Assembly (NCBI RefSeq): GCF_022045235.1
Contig: NW_027266341.1
Location: 53,320,001 to 53,384,000 of the forward strand
From: Haliotis cracherodii
Taxonomy: Eukaryota
Direction: 5' to 3'
DNA: 64,000 bases
Below, one piece after another: positions 1 through 47,009 of the stretch; positions within the stretch are counted from its first letter, which is position 1; the number at the start of each line of letters is the position of its first letter. The notes under the pieces were generated by a model. The model was given only the letters and a program-made list of their open reading frames with translations. It was not told the origin of the DNA and made no database searches. The position numbers and the translations under genes were made by a program.

Positions 1-189
1 GACACAGCAGCACAGCAATATAGAGGCAGCATTCACTTTTTAACAATATCCATATGAATTTATGTCACATGTTCGGAAATCTTGAGGATTTGGCCAATAT
101 TGCGATGCTGCTGTCGCCCATATATTATTAGCTGTAAGGAAGAAACACTGTAGAGAAAACAGACGACTTGTGTATACATTACAGAAACA

Positions 190-195
190 TTTATT
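190..195 (-). promoter_or_regulatory. Poly(A) signal of the array gene (repeated in units 1-13)
   Basis: Minus strand reads AATAAA, then ~20 nt later CA followed by GU/U-rich gtcgtctgttttctctacagtgtttcttcc. Confidence 0.55.
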
Positions 196-385
196 CAGAT
201 GACCGAAAGTCGAAAGTAATATGCCTCAAGGGAGATCCAAAAACGGGCCAAAATTGTATAGAAAGTATGGTCTTGTGCCATGCTAATAAACCAAGAGGTT
301 TGCCGAAAGGAAACTGAAGGTCGGGCCAAAACAGTGAGCCTAAAAATACGCCAAAAATACGCTAAGAGCGGGTATATGGAATGGT

Positions 386-387
<2 letters not shown>

Positions 388-476
<89 letters not shown>

Positions 477-1028
477 CATGTATGCTCGTTCATTTACTCT
501 AACTCTCACCTCTAACATACATACACTCTCCCTCTCATACATACAAACATACATACACACATTATTATGCATACATGCTCATTCACTCTCTCACACTCAC
601 ACGCAAATACACACACATACATGCATACAGACAGACAGACAGACATGCCAATTCAATCTTTCATTTACTCTCACACACACTCACACAATACACACACACA
701 CTCACACACAAATACACACACATACATGCATACAGACAGAAACAGACAGACATGCCAATTCAATCTTTCATTTACTCTCACACAAACGCACACATTACAC
801 ACACACACACACAAACATACATATTCATTCAGTCTCTCTTTCTCACACACATATACATACACACACATGCATGTTCATTCAAACTTATATTNNNNNNNNN
901 NNNNNNNNNNNNNNNNNNNNNNNNNNNNNNNNNNNNNNNNNNNNNNNNNNNNNNNNNNNNNNNNNNNNNNNNNNNNNNNNNNNNNNNNNNNNNNNNNNNN
1001 NNNNNNNNNNNNNNNNNNNNNNNNNNNN
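388..1028. repeat. (CT)n plus CA/CATA-rich compound microsatellite in the 3'UTR of the array gene (every unit; partly N-masked)
   Basis: Perfect (CT)n at 388-473, degenerate CA/CATA/CAGA tract, and a (CATA)n run visible unmasked in units 3, 4, 10 and 13. Confidence 0.95.
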
Positions 1029-1066
1029 TCACTTGCACACATTCAGACATTAAAAGGATAAGGAGT

Positions 1067-1830
1067 CTAAGAGAAGATCTTCCTAAAGAAGGCAGCCGCT
1101 CTCGTCAGCGCCTTTCTAAGGGGATGAATCTCTCTGTCATCCACAAAGCTGTGGTCGTCGTCGTCCTCGTACACCCAGTAGTCACTGTCATCGTCGTCAC
1201 TTGGGGCAGGATAGTAAGCGGCGTGGTTGATGGTGACAGGGGCGGGGAGCGTCTCACCGTAGACAGGGCGGGCCCAGAACGGAGTGAAGACGCTCAGGGG
1301 GTCGGGACAACGGGAAGGGGACACAGCCAGGGAACGCTACACATCGAGGGGTGGAGGGAGGGACAAAGGAAGTCAAGTCAGACAGAAATACGGGATAATT
1401 TTGCATAGAAAACGAATCACACTTTATTATAGGGACTGGGCAGACTTAATGTGCAACAAATCAGCTATACTAGACGGAAGAACTTATAGGGTGGGCAAGT
1501 AAAACTACATACACAGTCGGACTCCTCATCCTGAGACGGCCACAAACTCACAGCCGCAGGAGTGCCATAATAGCGAATTATGTCCTCCCGAGCTGAAAAA
1601 GAAAAACGAAAGCTAGCCTCAGTTAAATGTACGCCGACGGCTACGTTCAAAAAATCACAATTCATGACTTCTGACAGCTACAGTATCCCACTCGACCTCG
1701 GCCCTTTGACACCTCGAAGTCCAAGTGTATGTAGGGTTACAGGCTGTGCTGCAAGACGACATTTAACCAATAAAATGGGCCAAACAGCTCCCTTTCACGG
1801 AAAACGGGTTATCTTACATCTGTACAACAT
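1067..1830 (-). CDS. Array orphan gene copy 1, spliced join(1830..1818, 1592..1513 [alt. donor 1552], 1336..1067); MLYRSREDIIRYYGTPAA(VSLWPSQDEESDC)RSLAVSPSRCPDPLSVFTPFWARPVYGETLPAPVTINHAAYYPAPSDDDDSDYWVYEDDDDHSFVDDREIHPLRKALTRAAAFFRKIFS
   Basis: Donors are T|GTAAGA and GCT|GTGAGT or TGT|GTATGT. Acceptors are tttttctttttcag and pyrimidine-rich ...gatgtgtag. Phases are compatible (1, 0). Several between-copy differences are synonymous in this frame. Exon 1 and the ATG are less certain than exons 2-3. Confidence 0.65.
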
Positions 1831-1915
1831 CGCCCGACGCTATAATGTACGAACAGGTTTCATCTGAGAACTACATGTCAAGTTTACAATCTAACATTTT
1901 CAGTTATGACAATTG

Positions 1916-1935
1916 CAAATGGCGGCCGCCATCTT
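1916..1935. promoter_or_regulatory. Palindromic double YY1-type motif (caaATGGCGGCCGCCATctt) in the probable promoter/5' region of each unit
   Basis: Perfect 14-bp palindrome at 1919-1932 resembling the YY1 AANATGGCGG consensus on both strands. It lies ~90 nt upstream of the predicted ATG, with CCAAT motifs nearby. Confidence 0.45.
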
Positions 1936-2751
1936 CAGTCCCGATACTGCTGCCTAACAACGACCAATTTCACGTCTAATTTAGCATGTTAATACTGTTA
2001 AGTGGAATAATTGTGATCTTAAATACCTTGAATTTGAAGCCTTGTATTCATCTTGGAAGAAGACACACTTGGAATGATACAGCAGTGAGCGAAACGTAGA
2101 GGTCAGCGGAGCAAAAGCGATCGTTTTTCTGTTGAAAACAGAAGGGACGTCGATAACGGCAACGGTAACTACGTTACGGAGTTCGAGGAGTCAGAACGAG
2201 GCTCATCGCCAGCTTCCGGCGTGGTAAAGCCTAATGGCATTGCCAAGGGTGAAAACTGCCGGGTTTATTTCGTCTGAACACCGGGATTAAGTTGTATCTT
2301 ACAACTGAAACGTTGTCTACATCAGTTCAGAGTTTGAAAAAAATGTGCAGGTGAAACTAGGTGTTTTTCGTGCCTCCATTACTCGAAACAGGGTGAATTT
2401 TGTTCACTTTGATATGGACATTAACCTTAAACGTTTGCTAGGCCGAATAGCGATACCACATAACGACCCTCTATTATACTAACCTTCACAATACCTTTTA
2501 CATTCGACAAACTGACACGGGCTAGCAGGCTAGTAAGAATGCACATCTCTGATAATCCATGTGGGATTTGGGAATTATTCCCTATCCTACAGGGATAAAA
2601 TAAAAGTTAAATGGTACTGGTATTTTCCAACGTGTGCAGCGACAGTTCTTATTTGGTTTGATTTCTAATCTGGAAACACGATGACCACAGAAAATAGCTA
2701 ATAGGAGAGAAAGATAAATGACAAGCATATTGGTTTTTACTACACTAGGCC

Positions 2752-3054
2752 TGAGGGGCCGACCATTTCATGTTCGTTTGGAAGGGGGAGTGGGCGACGT
2801 TGGATTTTGTATGGAGACTAGATAGTTTTCAGCTACAAATGCAAAATCAGTTATAAACAATGAGCCTAAATAAAACATTTTTCAACAACCCACCTTGCAA
2901 CAACGTATTTTTGGTGGCCGACATGTTCTTTTTGTCCAACATATGGAAGCCTAATTAGTTTTCAATCAACTTTGGAGACAATATATTTTTTTTCTGAAAA
3001 AATCCTAGCCACCCACACACTCACAGCCAGAGAAATCCTATTGACCGTCCCATT
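2752..3054. mobile_element. Degenerate MITE-like non-autonomous DNA element in each unit
   Basis: Left end (t)aaggggccgaccattt (best preserved at ~45122) and a decayed right end atcctattgaccgtcccat. The cognate clean right end atcaaatggtcggtccctaa occurs at 53689-53708. Confidence 0.45.
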
Positions 3055-4603: not shown

Positions 4604-5367
4604 CTAAGAGAAGATCTTCCTAAAGAAGGCAGCCGCTCTCGTCAGCGCCTTTCTAAGGGGATGAATCTCTCTGTCATCCACAAAGCTGTGGTCGTCGTCG
4701 TCCTCGTACACCCAGTAGTCACTGTCATCGTCGTCACTTGGGGCAGGATAGTAAGCGGCGTGGTTGATGGTGACAGGGGCGGGGAGCGTCTCACCGTAGA
4801 CAGGGCGGGCCCAGAACGGAGTGAAGACGCTCAGGGGGTCGGGACAACGGGAAGGGGACACAGCCAGGGAACGCTACACATCGAGGGGTGGAGGGAGGGA
4901 CAAAGGAAGTCAAGTCAGACAGAAATACGGGATACTTTTGCATAGAAAACGAATCACACTTTATTATAGGGACTGGGCAGACTTAATGTGCAACAAATCA
5001 GCTATACTAGACGGAAGAACTTATAGGGTGGGCAAGTAAAACTACATACACAGTCGGACTCCTCATCCTGAGACGGCCACAAACTCACAGCCGCAGGAGT
5101 GCCATAATAGCGAATTATGTCCTCCCGAGCTGAAAAAGAAAAACGAAAGCTAGCCTCAGTTAAATGTACGCCGACGGCTACGTTCAAAAAATCACAATTC
5201 ATGACTTCTGACAGCTACAGTATGACACTCGACCTCGGCCCTTTGACACCTCGAAGTCCAAGTGTATGTAGGGTTACAGGCTGTGCTGCAAGACGACATT
5301 TAACCAATAAAATGGGCCAAACAGCTCCCTTTCACGGAAAACGGGTTATCTTACATCTGTACAACAT
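4604..5367 (-). CDS. Array orphan gene copy 2 (3 exons)
   Basis: Same exon structure and intact splice sites as copy 1. Confidence 0.65.
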
Positions 5368-7579
5368 CGCCCGACGCTATAATGTACGAACAGGTTTCAT
5401 CTGAGAACCACATGTCAAGTTTACAATCTAACATTTTCAGTTATGACAATTGCAAATGGCGGCCGCCATCTTCAGTCCCGATACTGCTGCCTAACAACGA
5501 CCAATTTCACGTCTAATTTAGCATGTTAATACTGTTAAGTGGAATAATTGTGATCTTAAATACCTTGAATGTGAAGCCTTGTATTCATCTTGGAAGAAGA
5601 CACACTTGGAATGATACAGCAGTGAGCGAAACGTAGAGGTCAGCGGAGCAAAAGCGATCGTTTTTCTGTTGAAAACAGAAGGGACGTCGATAACGGCAAC
5701 GGTAACTACGTTACGGAGTTCGAGGAGTCAGAACGAGGCTCATCGCCAGCTTTCGGCGTGGTAAAGCCTAATGGCATTGCCAAGGGTGAAAACTGCCGGG
5801 TTTATTTCGTCTGAACACCGGGATTAAGTTGTATCTTACAACTGAAACGTTGCCTACATCAGTTCAGAGTTTGAAAAAAATGTGCAGGTGAAACTAGGTG
5901 TTTTTCGTGCCTCCATTACTCGAAACAGGGTGAATTTTGTTCACTTTGATATGGACATTAACCTTAAACGTTTGCTAGGCCGAATAGCGATACCACATAA
6001 CGACCCTCTATTATACTAACCTTCACAATACCTTTTACATTCGACAAACTGACACGGGCTAGCAGGCTAGTAAGAATGCACATCTCTGATAATCCATGTG
6101 GGATTTGGGAATTATTCCCTATCCTACAGGGATAAAATAAAAGTTAAATGGTACTGGTATTTTCCAACGTGTGCAGCGACAGTTCTTATTTGGTTTGATT
6201 TCTAATCTGGAAACACGATGACCACAGAAAATAGCTAATAGGAGAGAAAGATAAATGACAAGCATATTGGTTTTTACTACACTAGGCCTGAGGGGCCGAC
6301 CATTTCATGTTCGTTTGGAAGGGGGAGTGGGCGACGTTGGATTTTGTATGGAGACTAGATATTTTTCAGCTGCAAATGCAAAATCAGTTATAAACAATGA
6401 GCCTAAATAAAACATTGTTCAAAAACCCACCTTGCAACAACGTATTTTTGGTGGCCGACATGTTCTTTTTGTCCAACATATGGAAGCCTAATTAGTTTTC
6501 AATCAACTTTGGAGACAATATATTTTTTTTCTGAAAAAATCCTAGCCACCCACACACTCACAGTCAGAGAAATCCTATTGACCGTCCCATTTTGGAAACC
6601 TTGATGTGGACGTACAGGGGTAGAATTCAGACCCCTTGTATCATTTAGGTATTTTTGTAGAATGCCAGATACGAATATTACGTCATATATATATATTAAT
6701 CTACTCTTGCATACGAGTAGGTATCAATATAGGCTTTCTACTTGCGCCTGGCCTCGGCCTATGTATAAAAGCATGCCCTCTGCAATTTCTGAAGACCACG
6801 GGCCAAAAGACAAGCAGTGAGGTGATGAGACGAGTGGAATCCAATATTGACTGAGGCGAAGGGAGATCACTCTCAACCCCTTGTCCGACTACTGCTATTA
6901 GTTGGGTGAAGTGCTCGTAATATATCCCATGTGGCGACACTTGTGTTTTAGAGAAGAAAGGCAATTCTCGATTCGCACTCCTTTAAAAGGAAGCCACGTT
7001 TATTGTTACATTAGAAACGATTAGCTATTATATTGGAATATAAAATTTATTCCAGATAACAAAGTATCAGAGAGCTGTCCTCAGAGAATATCCCGTGTCA
7101 CAATTGTCGCCCACATAAACATTTAGAAGTGTCTGATCTTAAGGTAACCCCACCTATTTAGAAATCTTCTGCTAAGTGCAGATCATGAAACTGGGACACA
7201 GCAGCACAGCAATATAGAGGCAGCATTCACTTTTTAACAATATCCATATGAATTTATGTCACATGTTCGGAAATCTTGAGGATTTGGCCAATATTGCGAT
7301 GCTGCTGTCGCCCATATATTATTAGCTGTAAGGAAGAAACACTGTAGAGAAAACAGACGACTTGTGTATACATTACAGAAACATTTATTCAGATGACCGA
7401 AAGTCGAAAGTAATATGCCTCAAGGGAGATCCAAAAACGGGCCAAAATTGTATAGAAAGTATGGTCTTGTGCCATGCTAATAAACCAAGAGGTTTGCCGA
7501 ACGGAAACTGAAGGTCGGGCCAAAACAGTGAGCCTAAAAATACGCCAAAAATACGCTAAGAGCGGGTATATTGAATGGT

Positions 7580-8129: not shown

Positions 8130-8893
8130 CTAAGAGAAGATCTTCCTAAAGAAGGCAGCCGCTCTCGTCAGCGCCTTTCTAAGGGGATGAATCTCTCTGT
8201 CATCCACAAAGCTGTGGTCGTCGTCGTCCTCGTACACCCAGTAGTCACTGTCATCGTCGTCACTTGGGGCAGGATAGTAAGCGGCGTGGTTGATGGTGAC
8301 GGGGGCGGGGAGCGTCTCACCGTAGACAGGGCGGGCCCAGAACGGAGTGAAGACGCTCAGGGGGTCGGGACAACGGGAAGGGGACACAGCCAGGGAACGC
8401 TACACATCGAGGGGTGGAGGGAGGGACAAAGGAAGTCAAGTCAGACAGAAATACGGGATACTTTTGCATAGAAAACGAATCACACTTTATTATAGGGACT
8501 GGGCAGACTTAATGTGCAACAAATCAGCTATACTAGACGGAAGAACTTATAGGGTGGGCAAGTAAAACTACATACACAGTCGGACTCCTCATCCTGAGAC
8601 GGCCACAAACTCACAGCCGCAGGAGTGCCATAATAGCGAATTATGTCCTCCCGAGCTGAAAAAGAAAAACGAAAGCTAGCCTCAGTTAAATGTACGCCGA
8701 CGGCTACGTTCAAAAAATCACAATTCATGACTTCTGACAGCTACAGTATGACACTCGACCTCGGCCCTTTGACACCTCGAAGTCCAAGTGTATGTAGGGT
8801 TACAGGCTGTGCTGCAAGACGACATTTAACCAATAAAATGGGCCAAACAGCTCCCTTTCACGGAAAACGGGTTATCTTACATCTGTACAACAT
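8130..8893 (-). CDS. Array orphan gene copy 3 (3 exons)
   Basis: As copy 1; synonymous CCT>CCC Pro change in exon 3. Confidence 0.65.
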
Positions 8894-11110
8894 TGCCCGA
8901 CGCTATAATGTACGAACAGGTTTCATCTGAGAACCACATGTCAAGTTTACAATCTAACATTTTCAGTTATGACAATTGCAAATGGCGGCCGCCATCTTCA
9001 GTCCCGATACTGCTGCCTAACAACGACCAATTTCACGTCTAATTTAGCATGTTAATACTGTTAAGTGGAATAATTGTGATCTTAAATACCTTGAATTTGA
9101 AGCCTTGTATTCATCTTGGAAGAAGACACACTTGGAATGATACAGCAGTGAGCGAAACGTAGAGGTCAGCGGAGCAAAAGCGATCGTTTTTCTGTTGAAA
9201 ACAGAAGGGACGTCGATAACGGCAACGGTAACTACGTTACGGAGTTCGAGGAGTCAGAACGAGGCTCATCGCCAGCTTCCGGCGTGGTAAAGCCTAATGG
9301 CATTGCCAAGGGTGAAAACTGCCGGGTTTATTTCGTCTGAACACCGGGATTAAGTTGTATCTTACAACTGAAACGTTGCCTACATCAGTTCAGAGTTTGA
9401 AAAATATGTGCAGGTGAAACTAGGTGTTTTTCGTGCCTCCATTACTCGAAACAGGGTGAATTTTGTTCACTTTGATATGGACATTAACCTTAAACGTTTG
9501 CTAGGCCGAATAGCGATACCACATAACGACCCTCTATTATACTAACCTTCACAATACCTTTTACATTCGACAAACTGACACGGGCTAGCAGGCTAGTAAG
9601 AATGCACATCTCTGATAATCCATGTGGGATTTGGGAATTATTCCCTATCCTACAGAGATAAAATAAAAGTTAAATGGTACTGGTATTTTCCAACGTGTGC
9701 AGCGACAGTTCTTATTTGGTTTGATTTCTAATCTGGAAACACGATGACCACAGAAAATAGCTAATAGGAGAGAAAGATAAATGACAAGCATATTGGTTTT
9801 TACTACACTAGGCCTGAGGGGCCGACCATTTCATGTTCCTTTGGAAGGGGGAGTGGGCGACGTTGGATTTTGTATGGAGACTAGATATTTTTCAGCTGCA
9901 AATGCAAAATCAGTTATAAACAATGAGCCTAAATAAAACATTTTTCAAAAACCCACCTTGCAACAACGTATTTTTGGTGGCCGACATGTTCTTTTTGTCC
10001 AACATATGGAAGCCTAATTAGTTTTCAATCAACTTTGGAGACAATATATTTTTTTTCTGAAAAAATCCTAGCCACCCACACACTCACAGTCAGAGAAATC
10101 CTATTGACCGTCCCATTTTGGAAACCTTGATGTGGACGTACAGGGGTAGAATTCAGACCCCTTGTATCATTTAGGTATTTTTGTAGAATGCCAGATACGA
10201 ATATTACGTCATATATATATATTAATCTACTCTTGCATACGAGTAGGTGTCAATATAGGCTTTCTACTTGCGCCTGGCCTCGGCCTATGTATAAAAGCAT
10301 GCCCTCTGCAATTTCTGAAGACCACGGGCCAAAAGACAAGCAGTGAGGTGATGAGACGAGTGGAATCCAATATTGACTGAGGCGAAGGGAGATCACTCTC
10401 AACCCCTTGTCCGACTACTGCTATTAGTTGGGTGAAGTGCTCGTAATATATCCCATGTGGCGACACTTGTGTTTTAGAGAAGAAAGGCAATTCTCGATTC
10501 GCACTCCTTTAAAAGGAAGCCACGATTATTGTTACATTAGAAACGATTAGCTATTATATTGGAATATAAAATTTATTCCAGATAACAAAGTATCAGAGAG
10601 CTGTCCTCAGAGAATATCCCGTGTCACAATTGTCGCCACATAAACATTTAGAAGTGTCTGATCTTAAGGTAACCCCACCTATTTAGAAATCTTCTGCTAA
10701 GTGCAGATCATGAAATTGGGACACAGCAGCACAGCAATATAGAGGCAGCATTCACTTTTTAACAATATCCATATGAATTTATGTCACATGTTCGGAAATC
10801 TTGAGGATTTGGCCAATATTGCGATGCTGCTGTCGCCCATATATTATTAGCTGTAAGGAAGAAACACTGTAGAGAAAACAGACGACTTGTGTATACATTA
10901 CAGAAACATTTATTCAGATGACCGAAAGTCGAAAGTAATATGCCTCAAGGGAGATCCAAAAACGGGCCAAAATTGTATAGAAAGTATGGTCTTGTGCCAT
11001 GCTAATAAACCAAGAGGTTTGCCGAAAGGAAACTGAAGGTCGGGCCAAAACAGTGAGCCTAAAAATACGCCAAAAATACGCTAAGAGCGGGTATATGGAA
11101 TGGTAGTCTC

Positions 11111-33558: not shown

Positions 33559-36359
33559 CGCCCGACGCTATAATGTACGAACAGGTTTCATCTGAGAACC
33601 ACATGTCAAGTTTACAATCTAACATTTTCAGTTATGACAATTGCAAATGGCGGCCGCCATCTTCAGTCCCGATACTGCTGCCTAACAACGACCAATTTCA
33701 CGTCTAATTTAGCATCTTAATACTGTTAAGTGGAATAATTGTGATCTTAAATACCTTGAATGTGAAGCCTTGTATTCATCTTGGAAGAAGACACACTTGG
33801 AATGATACAGCAGTGAGCGAAACGTAGAGGTCAGCGGAGCAAAAGCGATCGTTTTTCTGTTGAAAACAGAAGGGACGTCGATAACGGCAACGGTAACTAC
33901 GTTACGGAGTTCGAGGAGTCAGAACGAGGCTCATCGCCAGCTTCCGGCGTGGTAAAGCCTAATGGCATTGCCAAGGGTGAAAACTGCCGGGTTTATTTCG
34001 TCTGAACACCGGGATTAAGTTGTATCTTACAACTGAAACGTTGCCTACATCAGTTCATAGTTAAAAAAAATGTGCAGGTGAAACTAGGTGTTTTTCGTGC
34101 CTCCATTACTCGAAACAGGGTGAATTTTGTTCACTTTGATATGGACATTAACCTTAAACGTTTGCTAGGCCGAATAGCGATACCACATAACGACCCTCTA
34201 TTATACTAACCTTCACAATACCTTTTACATTCGACAAACTGACACGGGCTAGCAGGCTAGTAAGAATGCACATCTCTGATAATCCATGTGGGATTTGGGA
34301 ATTATTCCCTATCCTACAGGGATAAAATAAAAGTTAAATGGTACTGGTATTTTCCAACGTGTGCAGCGACAGTTCTTATTTGGTTTGATTTCTAATCTGG
34401 AAACACGATGACCACAGAAAATAGCTAATAGGAGAGAAAGATAAATGACAAGCATATTGGTTTTTACTACACTAGGCCTGAGGGGCCGACCATTTCATGT
34501 TCGTTTGGAAGGGGGAGTGGGCGACGTTGGATTTTGTATGGAGACTAGATATTTTTCAGCTGCAAATGCAAAATCAGTTATAAACAATGAGCCTAAATAA
34601 AACATTTTTCAAAAACCCACCTTGCAACAACGTATTTTTGGTGGCCGACATGTTCTTTTTGTCCAACATATGGAAGCCTAATTAGTTTTCAATCAACTTT
34701 GGAGACAATATATTTTTTTTCTGAAAAAATCCTAGCCACCCACATACTCACAGTCAGAGAAATCCTATTGACCGTCCCATTTTGGAAACCTTGATGTGGA
34801 CGTACAGGGGTAGAATTCAGACCCCTTGTATCATTTAGGTATTTTTGTAGAATGCCAGATACGAATATTACGTCATATATATATATTAATCTACTCTTGC
34901 ATACGAGTAGGTGTCAATATAGGCTTTCTACTTGCGCCTGGCCTCGGCCTATGTATAAAAGCATGCCCTCTGCAATTTCTGAAGACCACGGGCCAAAAGA
35001 CAAGCAGTGAGGTGATGAGACGAGTGGAATCCAATATTGACTGAGGCGAAGGGAGATCACTCTCAACCCCTTGTCCGACTACTGCTATTAGTTGGGTGAA
35101 GTGCTCGTAATATATCCCATGTGGCGACACTTGTGTTTTAGAGAAGAAAGGCAATTCTCGATTCGCACTCCTTTAAAAGGAAGCCACGATTATTGTTACA
35201 TTAGAAACGATTAGCTATTATATTGGAATATAAAATTTATTCCAGATAACAAAGTATCAGAGAGCTGTCCTCAGAGAATATCCCGTGTCACAATTGTCGC
35301 CACATAAACATTTAGAAGTGTCTGATCTTAAGGTAACCCCACCTATTTAGAAATCTTCTGCTAAGTGCAGATCATGAAACTGGGACACAGCAGCACAGCA
35401 ATATAGAGGCAGCATTCACTTTTTAACAATATCCATATGAATTTATGTCACATGTTCGGAAATCTTGAGGATTTGGCCAATATTGCGATGCTGCTGTCGC
35501 CCATATATTATTAGCTGTAAGGAAGAAACACTGTAGAGAAAACAGACGACTTGTGTATACATTACAGAAACATTTATTCAGATGACCGAAAGTCGAAAGT
35601 AATATGCCTCAAAGGAGATCCAAAAACGGGCCAAATTTGTATAGAAAGTATGGTCTTGTGCCATGCTAATAAACCAAGAGGTTTGCCGAAAGGAAACTGA
35701 AGGTCGGGCCAAAACAGTGAGCCTAAAAATACGCCAAAAATACGCTAAGAGCGGNNNNNNNNNNNNNNNNNNNNNNNNNNNNNNNNNNNNNNNNNNNNNN
35801 NNNNNNNNNNNNNNNNNNNNNNNNNNNNNNNNNNNNNNNNNNNNNNNNNNNNNNNNNNNNNNNNNNNNNNNNNNNNNNNNNNNNNTTACTCTAACTCTCA
35901 CCTCTAACATACATACACTCTCCCTCTCATACATACAAACATACATACACACATTATTATGCATACATGCTCATTCACTCTCTCACAATCACACGCAAAT
36001 ACACACACATACATGCATACAGACAGAAACAGACAGACATGCCAATTCAATCTTTCATTTACTCTCACACACACGCACACATTACACACACACACACAAA
36101 CATACATATTCATTCAGTCTCTCTTTCTCACACACATATACATACACACACATGCATGTTCATTCAAACTTATATTNNNNNNNNNNNNNNNNNNNNNNNN
36201 NNNNNNNNNNNNNNNNNNNNNNNNNNNNNNNNNNNNNNNNNNNNNNNNNNNNNNNNNNNNNNNNNNNNNNNNNNNNNNNNNNNNNNNNNNNNNNNNNNNN
36301 NNNNNNNNNNNNNNNNNNNNNTCACTTGCACACATTCAGACATTAAAAGGATAAGGAGT

Positions 36360-37123
36360 CTAAGAGAAGATCTTCCTAAAGAAGGCAGCCGCTCTCGTCA
36401 GCGCCTTTCTAAGGGGATGAATCTCTCTGTCATCCACAAAGCTGTGGTCGTCGTCGTCCTCGTACACCCAGTAGTCACTGTCATCGTCGTCACTTGGGGC
36501 AGGATAGTAAGCGGCGTGGTTGATGGTGACAGGGGCGGGGAGCGTCTCACCGTAGACAGGGCGGGCCCAGAACGGAGTGAAGACGCTCAGGGGGTCGGGA
36601 CAACGGGAAGGGGACACAGCCAGGGAACGCTACACATCGAGGGGTGGAGGGAGGGACAAAGGAAGTCAAGTCAGACAGAAATACGGGATAATTTTGCATA
36701 GAAAACGAATCACACTTTATTATAGGGACTGGGCAGACCTAATGTGCAACAAATCAGCTATACTAGACGGAAGAACTTATAGGGTGGGCAAGTAAAACTA
36801 CATACACAGTCGGACTCCTCATCCTGAGACGGCCACAAACTCACAGCCGCAGGAGTGCCATAATAGCGAATTATGTCCTCCCGAGCTGAAAAAGAAAAAC
36901 GAAAGCTAGCCTCAGTTAAATGTACGCCGACGGCTACGTTCAAAAAATCACAATTCATGACTTCTGACAGCTACAGTATGACACTCGACCTCGGCCCTTT
37001 GACACCTCGAAGTTCAAGTGTATGTAGGGTTACAGGCTGTGCTGCAAGACGACATTTAACCAATAAAATGGGCCAAACAGCTCCCTTTCACGGAAAACGG
37101 GTTATCTTACATCTGTACAACAT
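36360..37123 (-). CDS. Array orphan gene copy 11 (3 exons)
   Basis: As copy 1. Confidence 0.65.
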
Positions 37124-39924
37124 CGCCCGACGCTATAATGTACGAACAGGTTTCATCTGAGAACCACATGTCAAGTTTACAATCTAACATTTTCAGTTAT
37201 GACAATTGCAAATGGCGGCCGCCATCTTCAGTCCCGATACTGCTGCCTAACAACGACCAATTTCACGTCTAATTTAGCATGTTAATACTGTTAAGTGGAA
37301 TAATTGTGATCTTAAATACCTTGAATGTGAAGCCTTGTATTCATCTTGGAAGAAGACACACTTGGAATGATACAGCAGTGAGCGAAACGTAGAGGTCAGC
37401 GGAGCAAAAGCGATCGTTTTTCTGTTGAAAACAGAAGGGACGTCGATAACGGCAACGGTAACTACGTTACGGAGTTCGAGGAGTCAGAACGAGGCTCATC
37501 GCCAGCTTCCGGCGTGGTAAAGCCTAATGGCATTGCCAAGGGTGAAAACTGCCGGGTTTATTTCGTCTGAACACCGGGATTAAGTTGTATCTTACAACTG
37601 AAACGTTGCCTACATCAGTTCATAGTTAAAAAAAATGTGCAGGTGAAACTAGGTGTTTTTCGTGCCTCCATTACTCGAAACAGGGTGAATTTTGTTCACT
37701 TTGATATGGACATTAACCTTAAACGTTTGCTAGGCCGAATAGCGATACCACATAACGACCCTCTATTATACTAACCTTCACAATACCTTTTACATTCGAC
37801 AAACTGACACGGGCTAGCAGGCTAGTAAGAATGCACATCTCTGATAATCCATGTGGGATTTGGGAATTATTCCCTATCCTACAGGGATAAAATAAAAGTT
37901 AAATGGTACTGGTATTTTCCAACGTGTGCAGCGACAGTTCTTATTTGGTTTGATTTCTAATCTGGAAACACGATGACCACAGAAAATAGCTAATAGGAGA
38001 GAAAGATAAATGACAAGCATATTGGTTTTCACTACACTAGGCCTGAGGGGCCGACCATTTCATGTTCGTTTGGAAGGGGGAGTGGGCGACGTTGGATTTT
38101 GTATGGAGACTAGATATTTTTCAGCTGCAAATGCAAAATCAGTTATAAACAATGAGCTTAAATAAAACATTTTTCAAAAACCCACCTTGCAACAACGTAT
38201 TTTTGGTGGCCGACATGTTCTTTTTGTCCAACATATGGAAGCCTAATTAGTTTTCAATCAACTTTGGAGACAATATATTTTTTTTCTGAAAAAATCCTAG
38301 CCACCCACACACTCACAGTCAGAGAAATCCTATTGACCGTCTCATTTTGGAAACCTTGATGTGGACGTACAGGGGTAGAATTCAGACCCCTTGTATCATT
38401 TAGGTATTTTTGTAGAATGCCAGATACGAATATTACGTCATATATATATATTAATCTACTCTTGCATACGAGTAGGTGTCAATATAGGCTTTCTACTTGC
38501 GCCTGGCCTCGGCCTATGTATAAAAGCATGCCCTCTGCAATTTCTGAAGACCACGGGCCAAAAGACAAGCAGTGAGGTGATGAGACGAGTGGAATCCAAT
38601 ATTGACTGAGGCGAAGGGAGATCACTCTCAACCCCTTGTCCGACTACTGCTATTAGTTGGGTGAAGTGCTCGTAATATATCCCATGTGGCGACACTTGTG
38701 TTTTAGAGAAGAAAGGCAATTCTCGATTCGCACTCCTTTAAAAGGAAGCCACGATTATTGTTACATTAGAAACGATTAGCTATTATATTGGAATATAAAA
38801 TTTATTCCAGATAACAAAGTATCAGAGAGCTGTCCTCAGAGAATATCCCGTGTCACAATTGTCGCCACATAAACATTTAGAAGTGTCTGATCTTAAGGTA
38901 ACCCCACCTATTTAGAAATCTTCTGCTAAGTGCAGATCATGAAACTGGGACACAGCAGCACAGCAATATAGAGGCAGCATTCACTTTTTAACAATATCCA
39001 TATGAATTTATGTCACATGTTCGGAAATCTTGAGGATTTGGCCAATATTGCGATGCTGCTGTCGCCCATATATTATTAGCTGTAAGGAAGAAACACTGTA
39101 GAGAAAACAGACGACTTGTGTATACATTACAGAAACATTTATTCAGATGACCGAAAGTCGAAAGTAATATGCCTCAAGGGAGATCCAAAAACGGGCCAAA
39201 ATTGTATAGAAAGTATGGTCTTGTGCCATGCTAATAAACCAAGAGGTTTGCCGAAAGGAAACTGAAGGTCGGGCCAAAACAGTGAGCCTAAAAATACGCC
39301 AAAAATACGCTAAGAGCGGNNNNNNNNNNNNNNNNNNNNNNNNNNNNNNNNNNNNNNNNNNNNNNNNNNNNNNNNNNNNNNNNNNNNNNNNNNNNNNNNN
39401 NNNNNNNNNNNNNNNNNNNNNNNNNNNNNNNNNNNNNNNNNNNNNNNNNNNNNNNNTTACTCTAACTCTCACCTCTAACATACATACACTCTCCCTCTCA
39501 TAAATACAAACATACATACACACATTATTATGCATACATGCTCATTCACTCTCTCACACTCACACGCAAATACACACACATACATGCATACAGACAGAAA
39601 CAGACAGACATGCCAATTCAATCTTTCATTTACTCTCACACACACGCACACATTACACACACACACAAACATACATATTCATTCAGTCTCTCTTTCTCAC
39701 ACACATATACATACACACACATGCATGTTCATTCAAACTTATATTNNNNNNNNNNNNNNNNNNNNNNNNNNNNNNNNNNNNNNNNNNNNNNNNNNNNNNN
39801 NNNNNNNNNNNNNNNNNNNNNNNNNNNNNNNNNNNNNNNNNNNNNNNNNNNNNNNNNNNNNNNNNNNNNNNNNNNNNNNNNNNNNNTCACTTGCACACAT
39901 TCAGACATTAAAAGGATAAGGAGT

Positions 39925-40688
39925 CTAAGAGAAGATCTTCCTAAAGAAGGCAGCCGCTCTCGTCAGCGCCTTTCTAAGGGGATGAATCTCTCTGTCATCC
40001 ACAAAGCTGTGGTCGTCGTCGTCCTCGTACACCCAGTAGTCACTGTCATCGTCGTCACTTGGGGCAGGATAGTAAGCGGCGTGGTTGATGGTGACAGGGG
40101 CGGGGAGCGTCTCACCGTAGACAGGGCGGGCCCAGAACGGAGTGAAGACGCTCAGGGGGTCGGGACAACGGGAAGGGGACACAGCCAGGGAACGCTACAC
40201 ATCGAGGGGTGGAGGGAGGGACAATGGAAGTCAAGTCAGACAGAAATACGGGATAATTTTGCATAGAAAACGAATCACACTTTATTATAGGGACTGGGCA
40301 GACTTAATGTGCAACAAATCAGCTATACTAGACGGAAGAACTTATAGGGTGGGCAAGTAAAACTACATACACAGTCGGACTCCTCATCCTGAGACGGCCA
40401 CAAACTCACAGCCGCAGGAGTGCCATAATAGCGAATTATGTCCTCCCGAGCTGAAAAAGAAAAACGAAAGCTAGCCTCAGTTAAATGTACGCCGACGGCT
40501 ACGTTCAAAAAATCACAATTCATGACTTCTGACAGCTACAGTATCCCACTCGACCTCGGCCCTTTGACACCTCGAAGTCCAAGTGTATGTAGGGTTACAG
40601 GCTGTGCTGCAAGACGACATTTAACCAATAAAATGGGCCAAACAGCTCCCTTTCACGGAAAACGGGTTATCTTACATCTGTACAACAT
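39925..40688 (-). CDS. Array orphan gene copy 12 (3 exons)
   Basis: As copy 1. Confidence 0.65.
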
Positions 40689-42901
40689 CGCCCGACGCTA
40701 TAATGTACGAACAGGTTTCATCTGAGAACCACATGCCAAGTTTACAATCTAACATTTTCAGTTATGACAATTGCAAATGGCGGCCGCCATCTTCAGTCCC
40801 GATACTGCTGCCTAACAACGACCAATTTCACGTCTAATTTAGCATGTTAATACTGTTAAGTGGAATAATTGTGATCTTAAATACCTTGAATGTGAAGCCT
40901 TGTATTCATCTTGGAAGAAGACACACTTGGAATGATACAGCAGTGAGCGAAACGTAGAGGTCAGCGGAGCAAAAGCGATCGTTTTTCTGTTGAAAACAGA
41001 AGGGACGTCGATAACGGCAACGGTAACTACGTTACGGAGTTCGAGGAGTCAGAACGAGGCTCATCGCCAGCTTCCGGCGTGGTAAAGCCTAATGGCATTG
41101 CCAAGGGTGAAAACTGCCGGGTTTATTTCGTCTGAACACCGGGATTAAGTTGTATCTTACAACTGAAACGTTGCCTACATCAGTTCAGAGTTTGAAAAAA
41201 ATGTGCAGGTGAAACTAGGTGTTTTTCGTGCCTCCATTACTCAAAACAGGGTGAATTTTGTTCACTTTGATATGGACATTAACCTTAAACGTTTGCTAGG
41301 CCGAATAGCGATACCACATAACGACCCTCTATTATACTAACCTTCACAATACCTTTTACATTCGACAAACTGACACGGGCTAGCAGGCTAGTAAGAATGC
41401 ACATCTCTGATAATCCATGTGGGATTTGGGAATTATTCCCTATCCTACAGGGATAAAATAAAAGTTAAATGGTACTGGTATTTTCCAACGTGTGCAGCGA
41501 CAGTTCTTATTTGGTTTGATTTCTAATCTGGAAACACGATGACCACAGAAAATAGCTAATAGGAGAGAAAGATAAATGACAAGCATATTGGTTTTTACTA
41601 CACTAGGCCTGAGGGGCCGACCATTTCATGTTCCTTTGGAAGGGGGAGTGGGCGACGTTGGATTTTGTATGGAGACTAGATATTTTTCAGCTGCAAATGC
41701 AAAATCAGTTATAAAGAATGAGCCTAAATAAAACATTTTTCAAAAACCCACCTTGCAACAACGCATTTTTGGTGGCCGACATGTTCTTTTTGTCCAACAT
41801 ATGGAAGCCTAATTAGTTTTCAATCAACTTTGGAGACAATATATTTTTTTTCTGAAAAAATCCTAGCCACCCACACACTCACAGTCAGAGAAATCCTATT
41901 GACCGTCCCATTTTGGAAACCTTGATGTGGACGTACAGGGGTAGAATTCAGACCCCTTGTATCATTTAGGTATTTTTGTAGAATGCCAGATACGAATATT
42001 ACGTCATATATATATATATTAATCTACTCTTGCATACGAGTAGGTGTCAATATAGGCTTTCTACTTGCGCCTGGCCTCGGCCTATGTATAAAAGCATGCC
42101 CTCTGCAATTTCTGAAGACCACGGGCCAAAAGACAAGCAGTGAGGTGAGGAGACGAGTGGAATCCAATATTGACTGAGGCGAAGGGAGATCACTCTCAAC
42201 CCCTTGTCCGACTACTGCTATTAGTTGGGTGAAGTGCTCGTAATATATCCCATGTGGCGACACTTGTGTTTTAGAGAAGAAAGGCAATTCTCGATTCGCA
42301 CTCCTTTAAAAGGAAGCCACGATTATTGTTACATTAGAAACGATTAGCTATTATATTGGAATATAAAATTTATTCCAGATAACAAAGTATCAGAGAGCTG
42401 TCCTCAGAGAATAGCCCGTGTCACAATTGTCGCCACATAAACATTTAGAAGTGTCTGATCTTAAGGTAACCCCACCTATTTAGAAATCTTCTGCTAAGTG
42501 CAGATCATGAAATTGGGACACAGCAGCACAGCAATATAGAGGCAGCATTCACTTTTTAACAATATCCATATGAATTTATGTCACATGTTCGGAAATCTTG
42601 AGGATTTGGCCAATATTGCGATGCTGCTGTCGCCCATATATTATTAGCTGTAAGGAAGAAACACTGTAGAGAAAACAGACGACTTGTGTATACATTACAG
42701 AAACATTTATTCAGATGACCGAAAGTCGAAAGTAATATGCCTCAAGGGAGATCCAAAAACGGGCCAAAATTGTATAGAAAGTATGGTCTTGTGCCATGCT
42801 AATAAACCAAGAGGTTTGCCGAAAGGAAACTGAAGGTCGGGCCAAAACAGTGAGCCTAAAAATACGCCAAAAATACGCTAAGAGCGGGTATATGGAATGG
42901 T

Positions 42902-42978
<77 letters not shown>

Positions 42979-43429
42979 CATGTATGCTCGTTCATTTACT
43001 CTAACTCTCACCTCTAACATACATACACTCTCCCTCTCATACATACAAACATACAAACACACATTATTATGCATACATGCTCATTCACTCTCTCACACTC
43101 ACACGCAAATACACACACATACATGCATACAGACAGAAACAGACAGACATGCCAATTCAATATTTCATTTACTCTCACACACACGCACACATTACACACA
43201 CACACAAACATACATATTCACTCAGTCTCTCTTTCTCACACACATATACATACACACACATGCATGGTCATTCAAACTTATATTTACACTCACACAAACG
43301 CACACATACATACATACATACATACATACATACATACATACATACATACATACATACATACATACATACATACATACATACATACATTCACTCACTTGCA
43401 CACATTCAGACATTAAAAGGATAAGGAGT

Positions 43430-44193
43430 CTAAGAGAAGATCTTCCTAAAGAAGGCAGCCGCTCTCGTCAGCGCCTTTCTAAGGGGATGAATCTCTCTGT
43501 CATCCACAAAGCTGTGATCGTCGTCGTCCTCGTACACCCAGTAGTCACTGTCATCGTCGTCACTTGGGGCAGGATAGTAAGCGGCGTGGTTGATGGTGAC
43601 ACGGGCGGGGAGCGTCTCACCGTAGACAGGGCGGGCCCAGAACGGAGTGAAGACGCTCAGGGGGTCGGGACAACGGGAAGGGGACACAGCCAGGGAACGC
43701 TACACATCGAGGGGTGGAGGGAGGGACAAAGGAAGTCAAGTCAGACAGAAATACGGGATACTTTTGCATAGAAAACGAATCACACTTTATTATAGGGACT
43801 GGGCAGACTTAATGTGCAACAAATCAGCTATACTAGACGGAAGAACTTATAGGGTGGGCAAGTAAAACTACATACACAGTCGGACTCCTCATCCTGAGAC
43901 GGCCACAAACTCACAGCTGCAGGAGTGCCATAATAGCGAATTATGTCCTCCCGAGCTGAAAAAGAAAAACGAAAGCTAGCCTCAGTTAAATGTACGCCGA
44001 CGGCTACGTTCAAAAAATCACAATTCATGACTTCTGACAGCTACAGTATGACACTCGACCTCGGCCCTTTGACACCTCGAAGTCCAAGTGTATGTAGGGT
44101 TACAGGCTGTGCTGCAAGACGACATTTAACCAATAAAATGGGCCAAACAGCTCCCTTTCACGGAAAACGGGTTATCTTACATCTGTACAACAT
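43430..44193 (-). CDS. Array orphan gene copy 13 (3 exons; P>R variant)
   Basis: As copy 1; one non-synonymous (PAPV>PARV) and two synonymous (Asp, Ala) changes. Confidence 0.65.
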
Positions 44194-46370
44194 CGCCCGA
44201 CGCTATAATGTACGAACAGGTTTCATCTGAGAACCACATGCCAAGTTTACAATCTAACATTTTCAGTTATGACAATTGCAAATGGCGGCCGCCATCTTCA
44301 GTCCCGATACTGCTGCTTAACAACGACCAATTTCACGTCTAATTTAGCATGTTAATACTGTTAAGTGGAATAATTGTGATCTTAAATACCTTGAATGTGA
44401 AGCCTTGTATTCATCTTGGAAGAAGACACACTTGGAATGATACAGCAGTGAGCGAAACGTAGAGGTCAGCGGAGCAAAAGCGATCGTTTTTCTGTTGAAA
44501 ACAGAAGGGACGTCGATAACGGCAACGGTAACTACGTTACGGAGTTCGAGGAGTCAGAACGAGGCTCATCGCCAGCTTCCGGCGTGGTAAAGCCTAATGG
44601 CATTGCCAAGGGTGAAAACTGCCGGGTTTATTTCGTCTGAACACCGGGATTAAGTTGTATCTTACAACTGAAACGTTGCCTACATCAGTTTCAAAACATT
44701 GTGCAGGTGAAACTGGGTGTTTTTCGCGCCTCCATTACTCGAAACAGGGTGAATTTTGTTCACTTTGATATGGATCATCTCTTGTAGACATTAACCTTAA
44801 ACGTTTGCTAGGCCGAATAGCGATACCATATAACGACCCTCTATTATACCAGCCTTCACAATACCTTTTACATTCGACAGACTGACACGGGCTAGCAGGC
44901 TAGTAAGAATGCCCATCTCTGATAATCCAAGTGGGATTGGGGAATTATTCCCTAGCCTACAGGGATAAAATAAAAGTTAAATGGTACTGGTAAATACCAA
45001 CGTGTGCAGCGACAGTTCTTATTTGGTTTGATTTCTAATCTGGAAACACGATGACCACAGAAAATAGCTAATAGGAGAGAAAGATAAATGACAAGCATAT
45101 TGGTTATTACTATACTAGACCTAAGGGGCCGACCATTTCATGTTCTGTTGGAAGGGGGAGTGGGCGACCTTGGATTTTGTATGGAGACTAGATATTTTTC
45201 AGCTTCAAATGCAAAATCAGCTAAAATTATGAGCCTAAATAAAACATTTTTCAAAATCCCACCTTGCAACAACGTATTTTTGGTGGCTGACATGTTCTTT
45301 TTGTCCAACAGATGGAAGCCTAATTAGTTTTCAATCAATTTCGGAGACAATATATTTATTTTCTGAAAAAATCCTAGCCACCCACACACTAACAGTCAGA
45401 GAAATCCTATTGACCGTCCCATTTTAAAAACGCTGATGTGGACATACAGAGGTAGAATTCAGTCTCCTTGTATTATTTAGGTATTATTGTAGAATGCAAG
45501 ATACGAATATTACGTCATATATATATACATCAATCTACTCTTGCATACGAGTAGGTGTCAGTATAGGCTTTCTACTTGCGCCTGGCCTCGGCCTATGTAT
45601 AAAAGCATGCCCTCTGCAATATCTGAAGACCACGGGCCAAAGGAACAGCAGTGAGGTCGACTCCTGTAAAGCCTCAATGATGAGACGAGTGGAATCCAAT
45701 ATTGACTGGAGCGAAGGGAGATCACTCTCAATCCCTTGTCCGACTACTGCTATTAGTTGGGTGAAGTGCTCGTAATATATCCCATGTGGCGACACTTGTG
45801 TTTTAGAGAAGGCAATTCTCGATTCGCACTCCTTTAAAAGGAAGCCACAATTATTATTGTTACATTAGAAACGATGAGCTATTATATTGGAATAAAAAAA
45901 TTATTCCAGATAACAAAGTGTCAGAGAGCTGTCCTCAGAGAATATCCCGTGTCACAATTGTCGCCACATAAACATTTAGAAGTGTCTGATCTTAAGGTAA
46001 CCCCACCTACTTAGAAATCTTCTGCTAAGTGCAGATCATGAAACTGGGACACAGCAGCACAGCAATATAGGGACAACATTCACTTTTTAACAATATCCAT
46101 ATGAATTTATGTCTCATGTTCGGAAACCCTGGGATTTGGGCAGATGCCNNNNNNNNNNNNNNNNNNNNNNNNNNNNNNNNNNNNNNNNNNNNNNNNNNNN
46201 NNNNNNNNNNNNNNNNNNNNNNNNNNNNNNNNNNNNNNNNNNNNNNNNNNNNNNNNNNNNNNNNNNNNNNNNNNNNNNNNNNTACTCTCACACAAACGCA
46301 CACATACATACAAACCTGCTTATTCATTCACTCACTTGCACACATTCAGACATTAAAAGGATAAAGGAGT

Positions 46371-46897
46371 CTAAGAGAAGATCTTCCTAAAGAAGGCAGC
46401 CGCTCTCGTCAGCGCCTTTCTAAAGGGATGAATCTCTCTGTCATCCACAAAGCTGTGGTCGTCCTCGTCCTCGTACACCCAGTAGTCACTGTCATCATCG
46501 TCACTTGGGGCAGGGTAGTAATCAGCGTGGTTGATGGTGACGGGGGCGGGGAGCGTCTCACCGTAGATAGGGCGGGCCCAGAACGGAGTGAAGACGCTCA
46601 GGGGGTCGGGACAACGGGAAGGGGACACAGCCAGGGAACGCTACACATCGAGGGGGTGGAGGGAGGGACAAAGGAAGTCAGGTCAGACAGAAATACGGGA
46701 TACTTTTGCAAAGAAAACGAATCACAGTTTATTATAGGGACTGGGCAGACTTAATGTGCAACAAATCAGCTATACTAGACGGAAGAACTTATAGGGTGGG
46801 CATGTAAATCTACATACACTGTCGGACTCCTCATCCTGAGACGGCCACAAACTCACAGCCGCAGGAGTGCCATAATAGCGAATTATGTCCTCCCGAG
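46371..46897 (-). pseudogene. 5'-truncated diverged copy 14 of the array gene (exons 2 and 3 only)
   Basis: Exon 3 ORF is intact, with V>I, A>D, D>E and L>F plus four synonymous changes. The exon 2 acceptor is retained. Exon 1 and the promoter are absent, replaced by TEP-pseudogene sequence after 46943. Confidence 0.7.
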
Positions 46898-47009
46898 CTG
46901 AAAAGAAATACGAAAGCTAGGCTCAGTTAAATGTACGCCGACGATACGATTAAGGATACGATTAAGGATGGCGAACAGGCGTGAGGTGCAAAAGGAAATG
47001 AGCTCTAAC

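What the first reader, a model, noticed from the sequence alone, without database searches (positions are those of the whole stretch)
1..46943. Gene-coding macrosatellite: at least 13 tandem intact copies of a small spliced orphan gene
Seen: each ~3.5-kb unit has three minus-strand exons with canonical, phase-compatible splice sites, a stop codon and a poly(A) signal, and all 13 full copies keep the frame. The ORF track shows only pieces of it. Established: 3-5 kb tandem units carrying a small ORF occur elsewhere (e.g. human D4Z4/DUX4, amplified germline or immune genes). Inference: this is a recently amplified, dosage-selected lineage-specific gene. I recognise no domain in it, and no rRNA, snRNA, tRNA or histone gene in the unit.
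Basis: partly seen in the sequence, partly recalled or inferred. Interest (0 to 1): 0.8.

Follow-up and report, generated by a model that had tools for sequence, protein, structure and literature searches.

The report
Abalone orphan gene in tandem arrays
Each 3.5-kb repeat unit here carries one complete small gene known only from abalones, present in about two hundred selected copies in the black abalone genome, and its function is unknown.

Summary
Confirmed in the main, corrected in detail. Window 1-46943 is most of a 49.3-kb head-to-tail array of 3.46-3.58-kb units that are 99.3-99.9% alike. By scaffold lengths the genome is the black abalone assembly xgHalCrac1.

- **Gene model:** each of the 13 full units holds an intact three-exon minus-strand gene. 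It is ATG 2051 to 2027.
- **RNA evidence:** contigs of 4 of 4 runs show the joint 2027>1592 and none shows 1818>1592.
- **Product:** 124 aa (RefSeq also models 140 aa), called 'uncharacterized protein'. It is acidic, predicted disordered, has a basic amphipathic C-terminal helix and no known domain.
- **Family:** at least 185 copies on seven scaffolds. All 150 scored exon-3 copies are open, dN/dS is 0.15-0.22, splice sites are kept, and copies cluster by array.
- **Range:** found only in Haliotis.
- **Weak point:** intron-2 splicing was not seen in the laid contigs. It rests on conservation and on RefSeq models.

Function is unknown; high-dose supply is inferred. This scan had already met the family on another array (s1-829593). 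The N runs lie outside the gene and were not filled.

The parts
1..46943 (-). Tandem array as seen in the window. It holds the tail of a left-hand truncated unit, 13 full units (anchors 1029, 4566, 8092, 11575, 15152, 18710, 22272, 25832, 29301, 32757, 36322, 39887, 43392) and a right-hand partial unit at 46333-46943. The whole array is C78:53317630-53366943.
1067..2128 (-). Gene of unit 1. Exon 1 runs from about 2128 to 2027 (ATG 2051-2049). Intron 1 is 2026-1593 (GT..AG). Exon 2 is 1592-1513. Intron 2 is 1512-1337 (GTATGT..TAG). Exon 3 is 1336-1067, with stop TAG at 1069-1067.
   Evidence: The RNA joint 1592>2027 was seen in 4 of 4 runs, and contig X1 record 3 lies at 2027-2128. The 140-aa form (ATG 1665) equals RefSeq protein P0006, as judged by eye. 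The 124-aa exon layout follows P0010/P0013.
4604..5588 (-). Unit 2 coding span: exon 1 5588-5564, exon 2 5129-5050, exon 3 4873-4604.
8130..9114 (-). Unit 3: 9114-9090, 8655-8576, 8399-8130.
11613..12597 (-). Unit 4: 12597-12573, 12138-12059, 11882-11613.
15190..16174 (-). Unit 5: 16174-16150, 15715-15636, 15459-15190.
18748..19732 (-). Unit 6: 19732-19708, 19273-19194, 19017-18748.
22310..23294 (-). Unit 7: 23294-23270, 22835-22756, 22579-22310.
25870..26854 (-). Unit 8: 26854-26830, 26395-26316, 26139-25870.
29339..30323 (-). Unit 9: 30323-30299, 29864-29785, 29608-29339.
32795..33779 (-). Unit 10: 33779-33755, 33320-33241, 33064-32795.
36360..37344 (-). Unit 11: 37344-37320, 36885-36806, 36629-36360.
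39925..40909 (-). Unit 12: 40909-40885, 40450-40371, 40194-39925.
43430..44414 (-). Unit 13: 44414-44390, 43955-43876, 43699-43430. One amino-acid change in exon 3 (P33R), which matches RefSeq protein P0013.
46333..46943 (-). Terminal partial unit. Exon 3 is 46640-46371 (4 amino-acid differences) and exon 2 is 46897-46818. It has no exon 1. On the tree it falls outside the clade formed by the rest of the array.
2129..2220 (-). Conserved block upstream of exon 1, the putative promoter. With exon 1 and the first 118 nt of intron 1 (1909-2026) it forms one of only three blocks of the unit that align between the two subfamilies.
   Evidence: alignment A2.
1917..1935 (-). Conserved GC-rich motif in intron 1 (GGCCGCCATTTGC core). 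It is kept in 7 of 7 arrays whose sequence covered it. The likeness to a YY1-type site is recalled, not tested.

Best explanation
The window holds one array of a large, abalone-restricted family of tandemly arrayed protein-coding genes.

**Shown**
- Every 3.5-kb unit is a complete transcription unit on the minus strand: a conserved promoter block and three exons of 25, 80 and 270 coding nt.
- It is transcribed, and intron 1 is spliced.
- The protein frame of exons 2 and 3 is under purifying selection.
- Copies within an array are nearly identical, while arrays differ. This is the signature of local amplification and homogenisation by unequal crossing-over or gene conversion (concerted evolution).

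**Inferred**
- The arrays exist because the cell needs a very high or very fast supply of the product.
- The product is a 124-aa acidic, largely disordered, non-secreted protein with two invariant motifs. It ends in a basic amphipathic helix, which is the likely docking element for a membrane or a partner protein.
- Where and when it is made is not known.
For: **Array and genome**
- Array structure.
- Genome identity: scaffold lengths 61,937,186, 82,358,895 and 89,134,964 match the RefSeq H. cracherodii records and the published largest scaffold.

**The gene is real**
- The exon-3 peptide is 99% identical to H. rufescens P0001 and 75% to H. asinina P0002.
- The H. cracherodii RefSeq proteins P0006, P0010 and P0013 sit on this scaffold.
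- The joint 1592>2027, CT..AC on the plus strand and so GT..AG on the minus strand, was seen in 4 of 4 runs from 4 studies.
- 19 of 21 listed runs, from 8 studies and 6 organism labels, hold part of the stretch.
- 13 of 13 units are intact.

**Family size**
- 150 of 150 scored exon-3 matches are open, out of 237 candidates.
- 185 motif hits against 0 for the reversed control.

**Selection**
- Exon-3 median dN/dS is 0.15-0.22 in the sense frame and 1.0-1.2 in the antisense frame.
- Between subfamilies, differences by codon position are 359, 401 and 933.
- Frames +1 and +2 carry stops in 24 of 24 representatives.
- Intron 2 varies from 166 to 340 nt, is mostly not a multiple of 3, and read-through hits a stop in 24 of 24.
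- Donor 2 and acceptor 3 are kept in 24 of 24 and acceptor 2 in 23 of 24.
- The exon 1 ATG and donor are kept in 8 of 8 arrays.
- Only exon 3, exon 2 and the exon-1/promoter block align between subfamilies.

**Concerted evolution**
- The array label needs 19 changes on the tree, where 17 is the minimum and shuffled labels average 55.7. None of 200 shuffles was as low.

**Protein**
- pI 4.5-4.9, and no hydrophobic segment.
- The C-terminal helix has a hydrophobic moment of 0.61 and charge +5.
- AlphaFold mean pLDDT is 56, with only helix 107-123 predicted.
Against: - **Intron 2 splicing not seen.** No joint 1513>1336 was listed. In X1, X2 and X5 single contigs run unspliced from exon 3 through intron 2 into exon 2 (records 1, 9 and 25). 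Only X3 shows lower depth in the intron-2 bin (142) than in the exon bins (2025-4913), and contig depth is a poor measure. Intron-2 splicing therefore rests on conservation and on RefSeq models, not on reads seen here.
- **RNA status guessed.** All runs were labelled 'RNA? (a guess)'. The spliced joint is what shows RNA.
- **No expression context.** There is no tissue, stage or protein-level evidence.
- **Dosage untested.** The dosage argument is an inference from copy number alone.
- **Dead copies exist.** One copy in the twin array has lost the acceptor of exon 2 (CG for AG), so not every copy is alive.
Confidence: 0.85

Rival explanations
1. One reading: exon 1 starts at ATG 1830 with its donor after 1818, giving proteins of 107/120 aa.
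For: The sites exist in this array and are phase-compatible. The GTAAGA donor is conserved in the paralogs.
Against: - The second codon is TAG in 18 of 18 rows from diverged arrays, and the ATG is lost in 8 of them.
- No such joint was listed in 4 runs, whereas 1592>2027 was seen in 4 of 4.
- The site lies outside the three blocks conserved between subfamilies.
- The database proteins start with the 2051 exon or at ATG 1665.
Confidence: 0.03
2. The unit is a selfish amplifying element, either transposon-borne or a rolling-circle/eccDNA reinsertion. Its ORF is a passenger with no function for the host.
For: Arrays lie at many places on 7 scaffolds, with unit lengths from about 3.0 to 5.3 kb. 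The intergenic parts of the unit turn over completely between subfamilies.
Against: - Purifying selection acts on the protein frame, and exactly the exons plus the promoter are kept.
- The few unit ORFs tested carry no transposon domain (only 2 non-gene ORFs of the unit were tested).
- The 280-nt segment that I suspected to be a mobile insert occurs only inside family arrays, 34 of 34 hits.
- Copies were found in arrays, not as scattered single insertions.
Confidence: 0.06
3. It is an ampliconic gene family driven by genetic conflict, such as a gamete-expressed driver and suppressor, rather than by a need for dose.
For: - Massive copy number, and arrays paired in opposite orientation on one scaffold (C78 53.32 and 53.96 Mb, C1 34.88 and 35.29 Mb).
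- Restriction to one genus.
- Two co-existing subfamilies.
Against: dN/dS is 0.15-0.22, with no sign of rapid protein change. There are no expression data, and no sex chromosome is known to me in abalones (recalled).
Confidence: 0.05
4. It is an assembly artefact: stutter of a single-copy region.
For: Very high identity between units.
Against: - Units differ at 117 of 2547 non-coding columns plus indels, in a nested pattern.
- The assembly is from HiFi reads with N50 of 16 kb at 37x (PMC9709981, section read).
- The same organisation recurs in many arrays.
- RefSeq lists many copies in two further species.
Confidence: 0.01

Closest known systems
RefSeq 'uncharacterized protein' genes of Haliotis cracherodii (e.g. 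XP_071087611.1 = P0006, 140 aa; P0010 and P0013, 124 aa), H. rufescens (LOC125376035 and others) and H. asinina (XP_067685017.1 and others)
   Same: They are the same genes. P0006 matches the window's exon-2 read-through ORF joined to exon 3 (compared by eye). P0013 matches unit 13.
   Different: The database gives no name, function or family. It models some arrays wrongly: P0029 chains nine exon-3 copies into one 655-aa protein. No paper was found.
Human gene-bearing macrosatellites: D4Z4/DUX4, and the GAGE, CT47 and TSPY arrays (recalled, not tested)
   Same: Kilobase-sized head-to-tail units each carry one small gene. GAGE-type products are likewise small, acidic and disordered.
   Different: - No homeobox or other domain and no sequence relatives outside Haliotis.
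- The family sits in dozens of arrays on seven scaffolds rather than at one locus.
- Germline-restricted expression is unknown here.
Tandem histone, 5S and snRNA gene arrays (recalled)
   Same: Many identical units evolve in concert and supply a high dose.
   Different: There is no histone fold, no Rfam family and no tRNA. The gene has two introns.
Multi-copy early-zygotic gene clusters, such as zebrafish miR-430 and mouse Dux/Zscan4 (recalled)
   Same: Short genes with short introns in tandem arrays, suited to burst transcription.
   Different: No stage data exist for this gene. This is an analogy only.

Membership tests
Gene-bearing macrosatellite / tandemly arrayed gene family | Head-to-tail units of more than 1 kb with high identity | tested here: met
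   14 anchors spaced 3456-3577 nt. Units 1-12 are 99.3-99.9% identical.
Gene-bearing macrosatellite / tandemly arrayed gene family | Each unit holds a complete gene | tested here: met
   13 of 13 full units have the ATG, three exons, GT/AG sites and a stop. A conserved promoter block is present.
Gene-bearing macrosatellite / tandemly arrayed gene family | The units are transcribed and spliced | tested here: inconclusive
   The intron 1 joint was seen in 4 of 4 runs. The intron 2 joint was not listed, and three contigs run through intron 2.
Gene-bearing macrosatellite / tandemly arrayed gene family | Concerted evolution within arrays | tested here: met
   Copies cluster by array: 19 label changes against a shuffled mean of 55.7. 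The edge copy has escaped homogenisation.
Gene-bearing macrosatellite / tandemly arrayed gene family | Copy number varies between individuals | not tested
Haliotis RefSeq 'uncharacterized protein' cluster (P0001/P0006) | Sequence identity of the product | tested here: met
   The exon-3 peptide is 99% identical to P0001 with 100% coverage. P0006 matches the window's translation, by eye.
D4Z4/DUX4-type array | Double homeobox ORF in the unit | tested here: not met
   No Pfam family even at E up to 10.
rRNA/5S/snRNA/tRNA/histone arrays | A structured RNA gene or a histone fold in the unit | tested here: not met
   Rfam gave 0 matches, ARAGORN 0 genes and Pfam 0 families.
Transposable element | Transposase, reverse transcriptase or Rep domain, and dispersed single copies | tested here: inconclusive
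   Only two further ORFs of the unit were scanned, with no family found. The suspected insert occurs only in family arrays. Copies lie in arrays. Array borders were not examined for terminal repeats.

The most novel reading that the evidence does not exclude
The roughly 200 arrayed copies form a burst-expression battery, comparable to early histone or first-wave zygotic gene arrays. On this reading they flood a particular cell type or stage (gamete, cleavage embryo or stressed tissue) with an abalone-specific acidic disordered protein. Its basic amphipathic tail would dock it to a membrane or a partner. That would make it a genus-specific cellular component needed in stoichiometric amounts, invented and then amplified within Haliotidae.
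Probability: 0.2. Interest if true: 0.75.

Novelty: new member of a known kind. Interest (0 to 1): 0.5.

Why it matters
**Scale and selection.** A protein-coding orphan kept in about two hundred intact, selected copies is unusual outside histone and RNA genes. It implies a strong and unexplained demand for one small disordered protein in abalones, a group of conservation and aquaculture importance.

**A model for concerted evolution.**
- The arrays show near-identical units within an array.
- An edge copy has escaped homogenisation.
- A twin array lies in opposite orientation on the same scaffold.
- Two old subfamilies co-exist.

**Practical consequences.** The arrays are likely sites of copy-number variation between individuals. 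They are also a trap for gene annotation: one RefSeq model chains nine units into a single protein.

Tried and rejected
**Searches that gave nothing**
- Tandem Repeats Finder cannot see the 3.5-kb period, because its longest period is 500. It gave only three short arrays.
- Rfam at gathering score and ARAGORN: nothing.
- Pfam on the exon 2 and exon 3 peptides and on two other ORFs of the unit: nothing.
- ESM Atlas: best scores 0.76 and 0.75, below any useful level.
- The AlphaFold model was too poor (pLDDT 56, pTM 0.17) for a fold search, so none was run.

**Ideas rejected**
- I thought 2541-2813, which is absent from the C12 units, might be a SINE/MITE insert. All 34 of 34 genome hits lie in family arrays, so it is a deletion in C12.
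- The long plus-strand ORF over exon 3 is open in 23 of 24 representatives. Its frame shows dN/dS of 1.0-1.2, so it is a by-product of the sense codons.

**Literature**
- No paper names the family. The listings gave 0 relevant hits.
- From PMC12627906 I read passages and section 3.3 only. It reports duplication-rich abalone chromosomes but not this gene.
- Supplements were closed and may hold gene lists that I could not see.

**Spliced model.** The model from the window was searched exon by exon. The joined step was left out. Full-length work used RefSeq proteins as the tools returned them (alignment A1).


Full report
**Observation**

The window is G000:C78:53320001-53384000 of a 1.18-Gb genome in 80 contigs. 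A 300-nt anchor recurs 14 times in register, at 1029, 4566, 8092, 11575, 15152, 18710, 22272, 25832, 29301, 32757, 36322, 39887, 43392 and 46333. The spacings are 3456-3577 nt, and the last is 2941 nt.

Over the first 2900 nt, units 1-12 are 99.3-99.9% identical and unit 13 is 96.5-96.9% identical to them. The 14th copy is homologous only for its first 611 nt. The array begins left of the window, at C78:53317630, inside exon 3 of a truncated unit. It ends at window 46943, in intron 1. Its total length is 49.3 kb.

**N runs**

- All lie in the CA-rich tail of the unit.
- None lies between a stop codon and the end of exon 1 in any of the 13 units.
- Units with and without N have similar lengths.
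- The published assembly has only 52 gaps per Gb (PMC9709981, section 'Nuclear Assembly' read).

They are therefore masks, and the coding parts are continuous. I did not fill them or look them up. The 3' untranslated end runs into one of them and is left open.

**Whose genome**

The exon-3 peptide hit RefSeq proteins of Haliotis rufescens (99%) and H. asinina (75%). The cluster members include H. cracherodii proteins on contigs of 61,937,186 and 82,358,895 bases. These are the lengths of C78 and C12. C1 (89,134,964) equals the largest scaffold of xgHalCrac1, a HiFi assembly with read N50 of 16 kb at 37x. The genome is the black abalone assembly.

**Gene model**

- The database proteins start differently. 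The 124-aa form begins with an 8-codon exon that I located at 2051-2027, with its donor GT at 2026. The 140-aa form starts at ATG 1665 inside intron 1 and reads through the acceptor.
- I laid contigs of four runs from four studies and organism labels on the whole readable unit, 1029-4415. A joint 1592>2027 (CT..AC on plus, so GT..AG on minus) appeared in 4 of 4 runs. No 1818>1592 joint was listed.
- Exon 1 reaches at least 2128 (X1 record 3).
- Under this model 13 of 13 full units are intact.
- ATG 1665 is lost in the diverged arrays, so the 140-aa form is local to this array.

**A weak point**

No 1513>1336 joint was listed. In X1, X2 and X5 single contigs run from exon 3 through intron 2 into exon 2. 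Only X3 shows a dip, with 142 in the intron bin against 2025-4913 in the exon bins.

**Selection**

The genome supplies its own comparison.
- *Copy number.* A protein search with exon 3 scored 150 of 237 candidates. All 150 are open, at 73-100% identity, in arrays on C78, C12, C1, C56, C34, C45 and C2. A degenerate 26-nt motif hit 185 times, against 0 for its reversed control.
- *Sampling.* I fetched 26 loci. 77 of 78 exon-3 copies have an exon 2 upstream, and the exception lies at a locus edge.
- *Splice sites.* In 24 array representatives, donor 2 (GTATGT) and acceptor 3 (TAG) are kept in 24 of 24. Acceptor 2 is kept in 23 of 24, with one dead-looking copy in the twin array.
- *Intron 2.* It is 166-183 nt in subfamily A and 292-340 nt in subfamily B, mostly not a multiple of 3. 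Read-through meets a stop in 24 of 24. Between subfamilies it is unalignable, with p-distance 0.41-0.57.
- *dN/dS.* The exon-3 median is 0.15 within subfamily A, 0.16 within B and 0.22 between them. It is 1.0-1.2 for the open antisense frame. Differences fall 359, 401 and 933 on codon positions 1, 2 and 3.
- *Conserved blocks.* Between subfamilies only three blocks of the unit align: 1056-1370, 1502-1606 and 1909-2220. These are exon 3, exon 2, and exon 1 with its upstream block and the start of intron 1.
- *Exon 1.* Its ATG and donor are kept in 8 of 8 arrays.

This supports a protein-coding gene with the corrected structure, including a true intron 2.

**Array dynamics**
- On a tree of 76 copies the array label needs 19 changes. 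The minimum is 17, the shuffled mean is 55.7, and 0 of 200 shuffles were as low.
- The two subfamilies split with full support.
- The window's array and an array in opposite orientation 0.6 Mb away (53.959-53.992 Mb) form one clade and share an identical copy.
- The terminal partial copy at 46371-46897 lies outside that clade. This is expected if array edges escape homogenisation.
- Within the window, variation is too low to show selection: 3 of 372 coding against 43 of 2681 non-coding columns in units 1-12.

**The protein**
- There is no Pfam family and no useful Atlas neighbour.
- A profile of 15 database proteins (A1) was run against 1.84 billion representatives. It found two Haliotis entries and three weak repetitive metagenome proteins.
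- One of the Haliotis entries, P0029, is a RefSeq model that chains nine exon-3 copies.
- The protein has pI 4.5-4.9 and no hydrophobic segment, hence no signal peptide or membrane span.
- AlphaFold gives mean pLDDT 56, with only helix 107-123 predicted.
- That helix is amphipathic, with hydrophobic moment 0.61 and charge +5.
- Invariant columns cluster in an N-terminal stretch, a proline/aromatic motif, an acidic run with a tryptophan, and the terminal helix.

**Mechanism**
- *Shown:* complete, transcribed, selected genes in arrays that evolve in concert.
- *Inferred:* the arrays are kept for dose, and the product acts through its conserved short motifs and docking helix.
- Timing and tissue are unknown, because run metadata were coded.

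**Novelty**

The genes are in RefSeq without a name. I found no paper, and supplements were closed. Another agent of this scan reached the same reading on the array at 55.63 Mb (s1-829593). I tested the claim independently here.

Noticed in passing
window 47074-47274 (-) and 47546-47722 (-): Directly upstream of the terminal partial unit, on the gene's strand, lies an exon-like ORF matching the alpha-2-macroglobulin bait-region domain (PF07703, E 7e-07, above its cutoff). A second piece matches MG4 weakly (E 0.056, below its cutoff). Whether a chimeric transcript exists was not tested.
   Followed up: partly
G000:C34, protein P0029 (XP_071118469.1): A 655-aa RefSeq model consists of nine exon-3 copies of subfamily B chained head to tail. 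It is either an annotation artefact of the array or splicing from unit to unit.
   Followed up: no
window 1428-1423 (-), inside intron 2: This is the only AATAAA in the gene, and it is kept in the subfamily A arrays aligned. One X3 contig (1391-1561) ends about 32 nt downstream of it. An intronic poly(A) site giving a truncated 50-aa product is possible.
   Followed up: no
window 2494-2533 and 2800-2835: RNA contigs of X1, X2 and X5 break here, with loose ends on both sides. The segment between is not a dispersed repeat. Unexplained.
   Followed up: partly
G000:C78:53959439-53991846: A twin array in opposite orientation lies 0.6 Mb away, 98-99% identical to the window's array. One of its copies is identical to window copies. 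Its last copy (L011:2285-2805) has lost the exon-2 acceptor (CG for AG).
   Followed up: partly
window 55583-57065 and 57295-57902: A minisatellite of 21-nt units (70 copies, 83% matches) and an 85-nt tandem repeat (7.2 copies) lie in a strongly C- and T-skewed stretch.
   Followed up: no
window 49300-62100, both strands: A short interspersed repeat recurs at least seven times. It is visible as similar ORF fragments, for example at 49303-49497, 50065-50199, 52952-53191, 54284-54643, 58075-58314, 60834-61085 and 61915-62107.
   Followed up: no
window 2129-2220 and 1917-1935 (-): Invariant non-coding blocks are shared by both subfamilies. Upstream of exon 1 there are blocks with AACGG cores (Myb-like, recalled). 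In intron 1 there is a GCCGCCATTT core (YY1-like, recalled). Neither was tested.
   Followed up: no
window 575-1408 (+) and the same place in each unit: A long plus-strand ORF lies antisense to exon 3 and is open in 23 of 24 array representatives. Its frame evolves neutrally (dN/dS 1.0-1.2), so it is a by-product of the sense codons. This explains why the ORF track showed 'only pieces' of the gene.
   Followed up: yes
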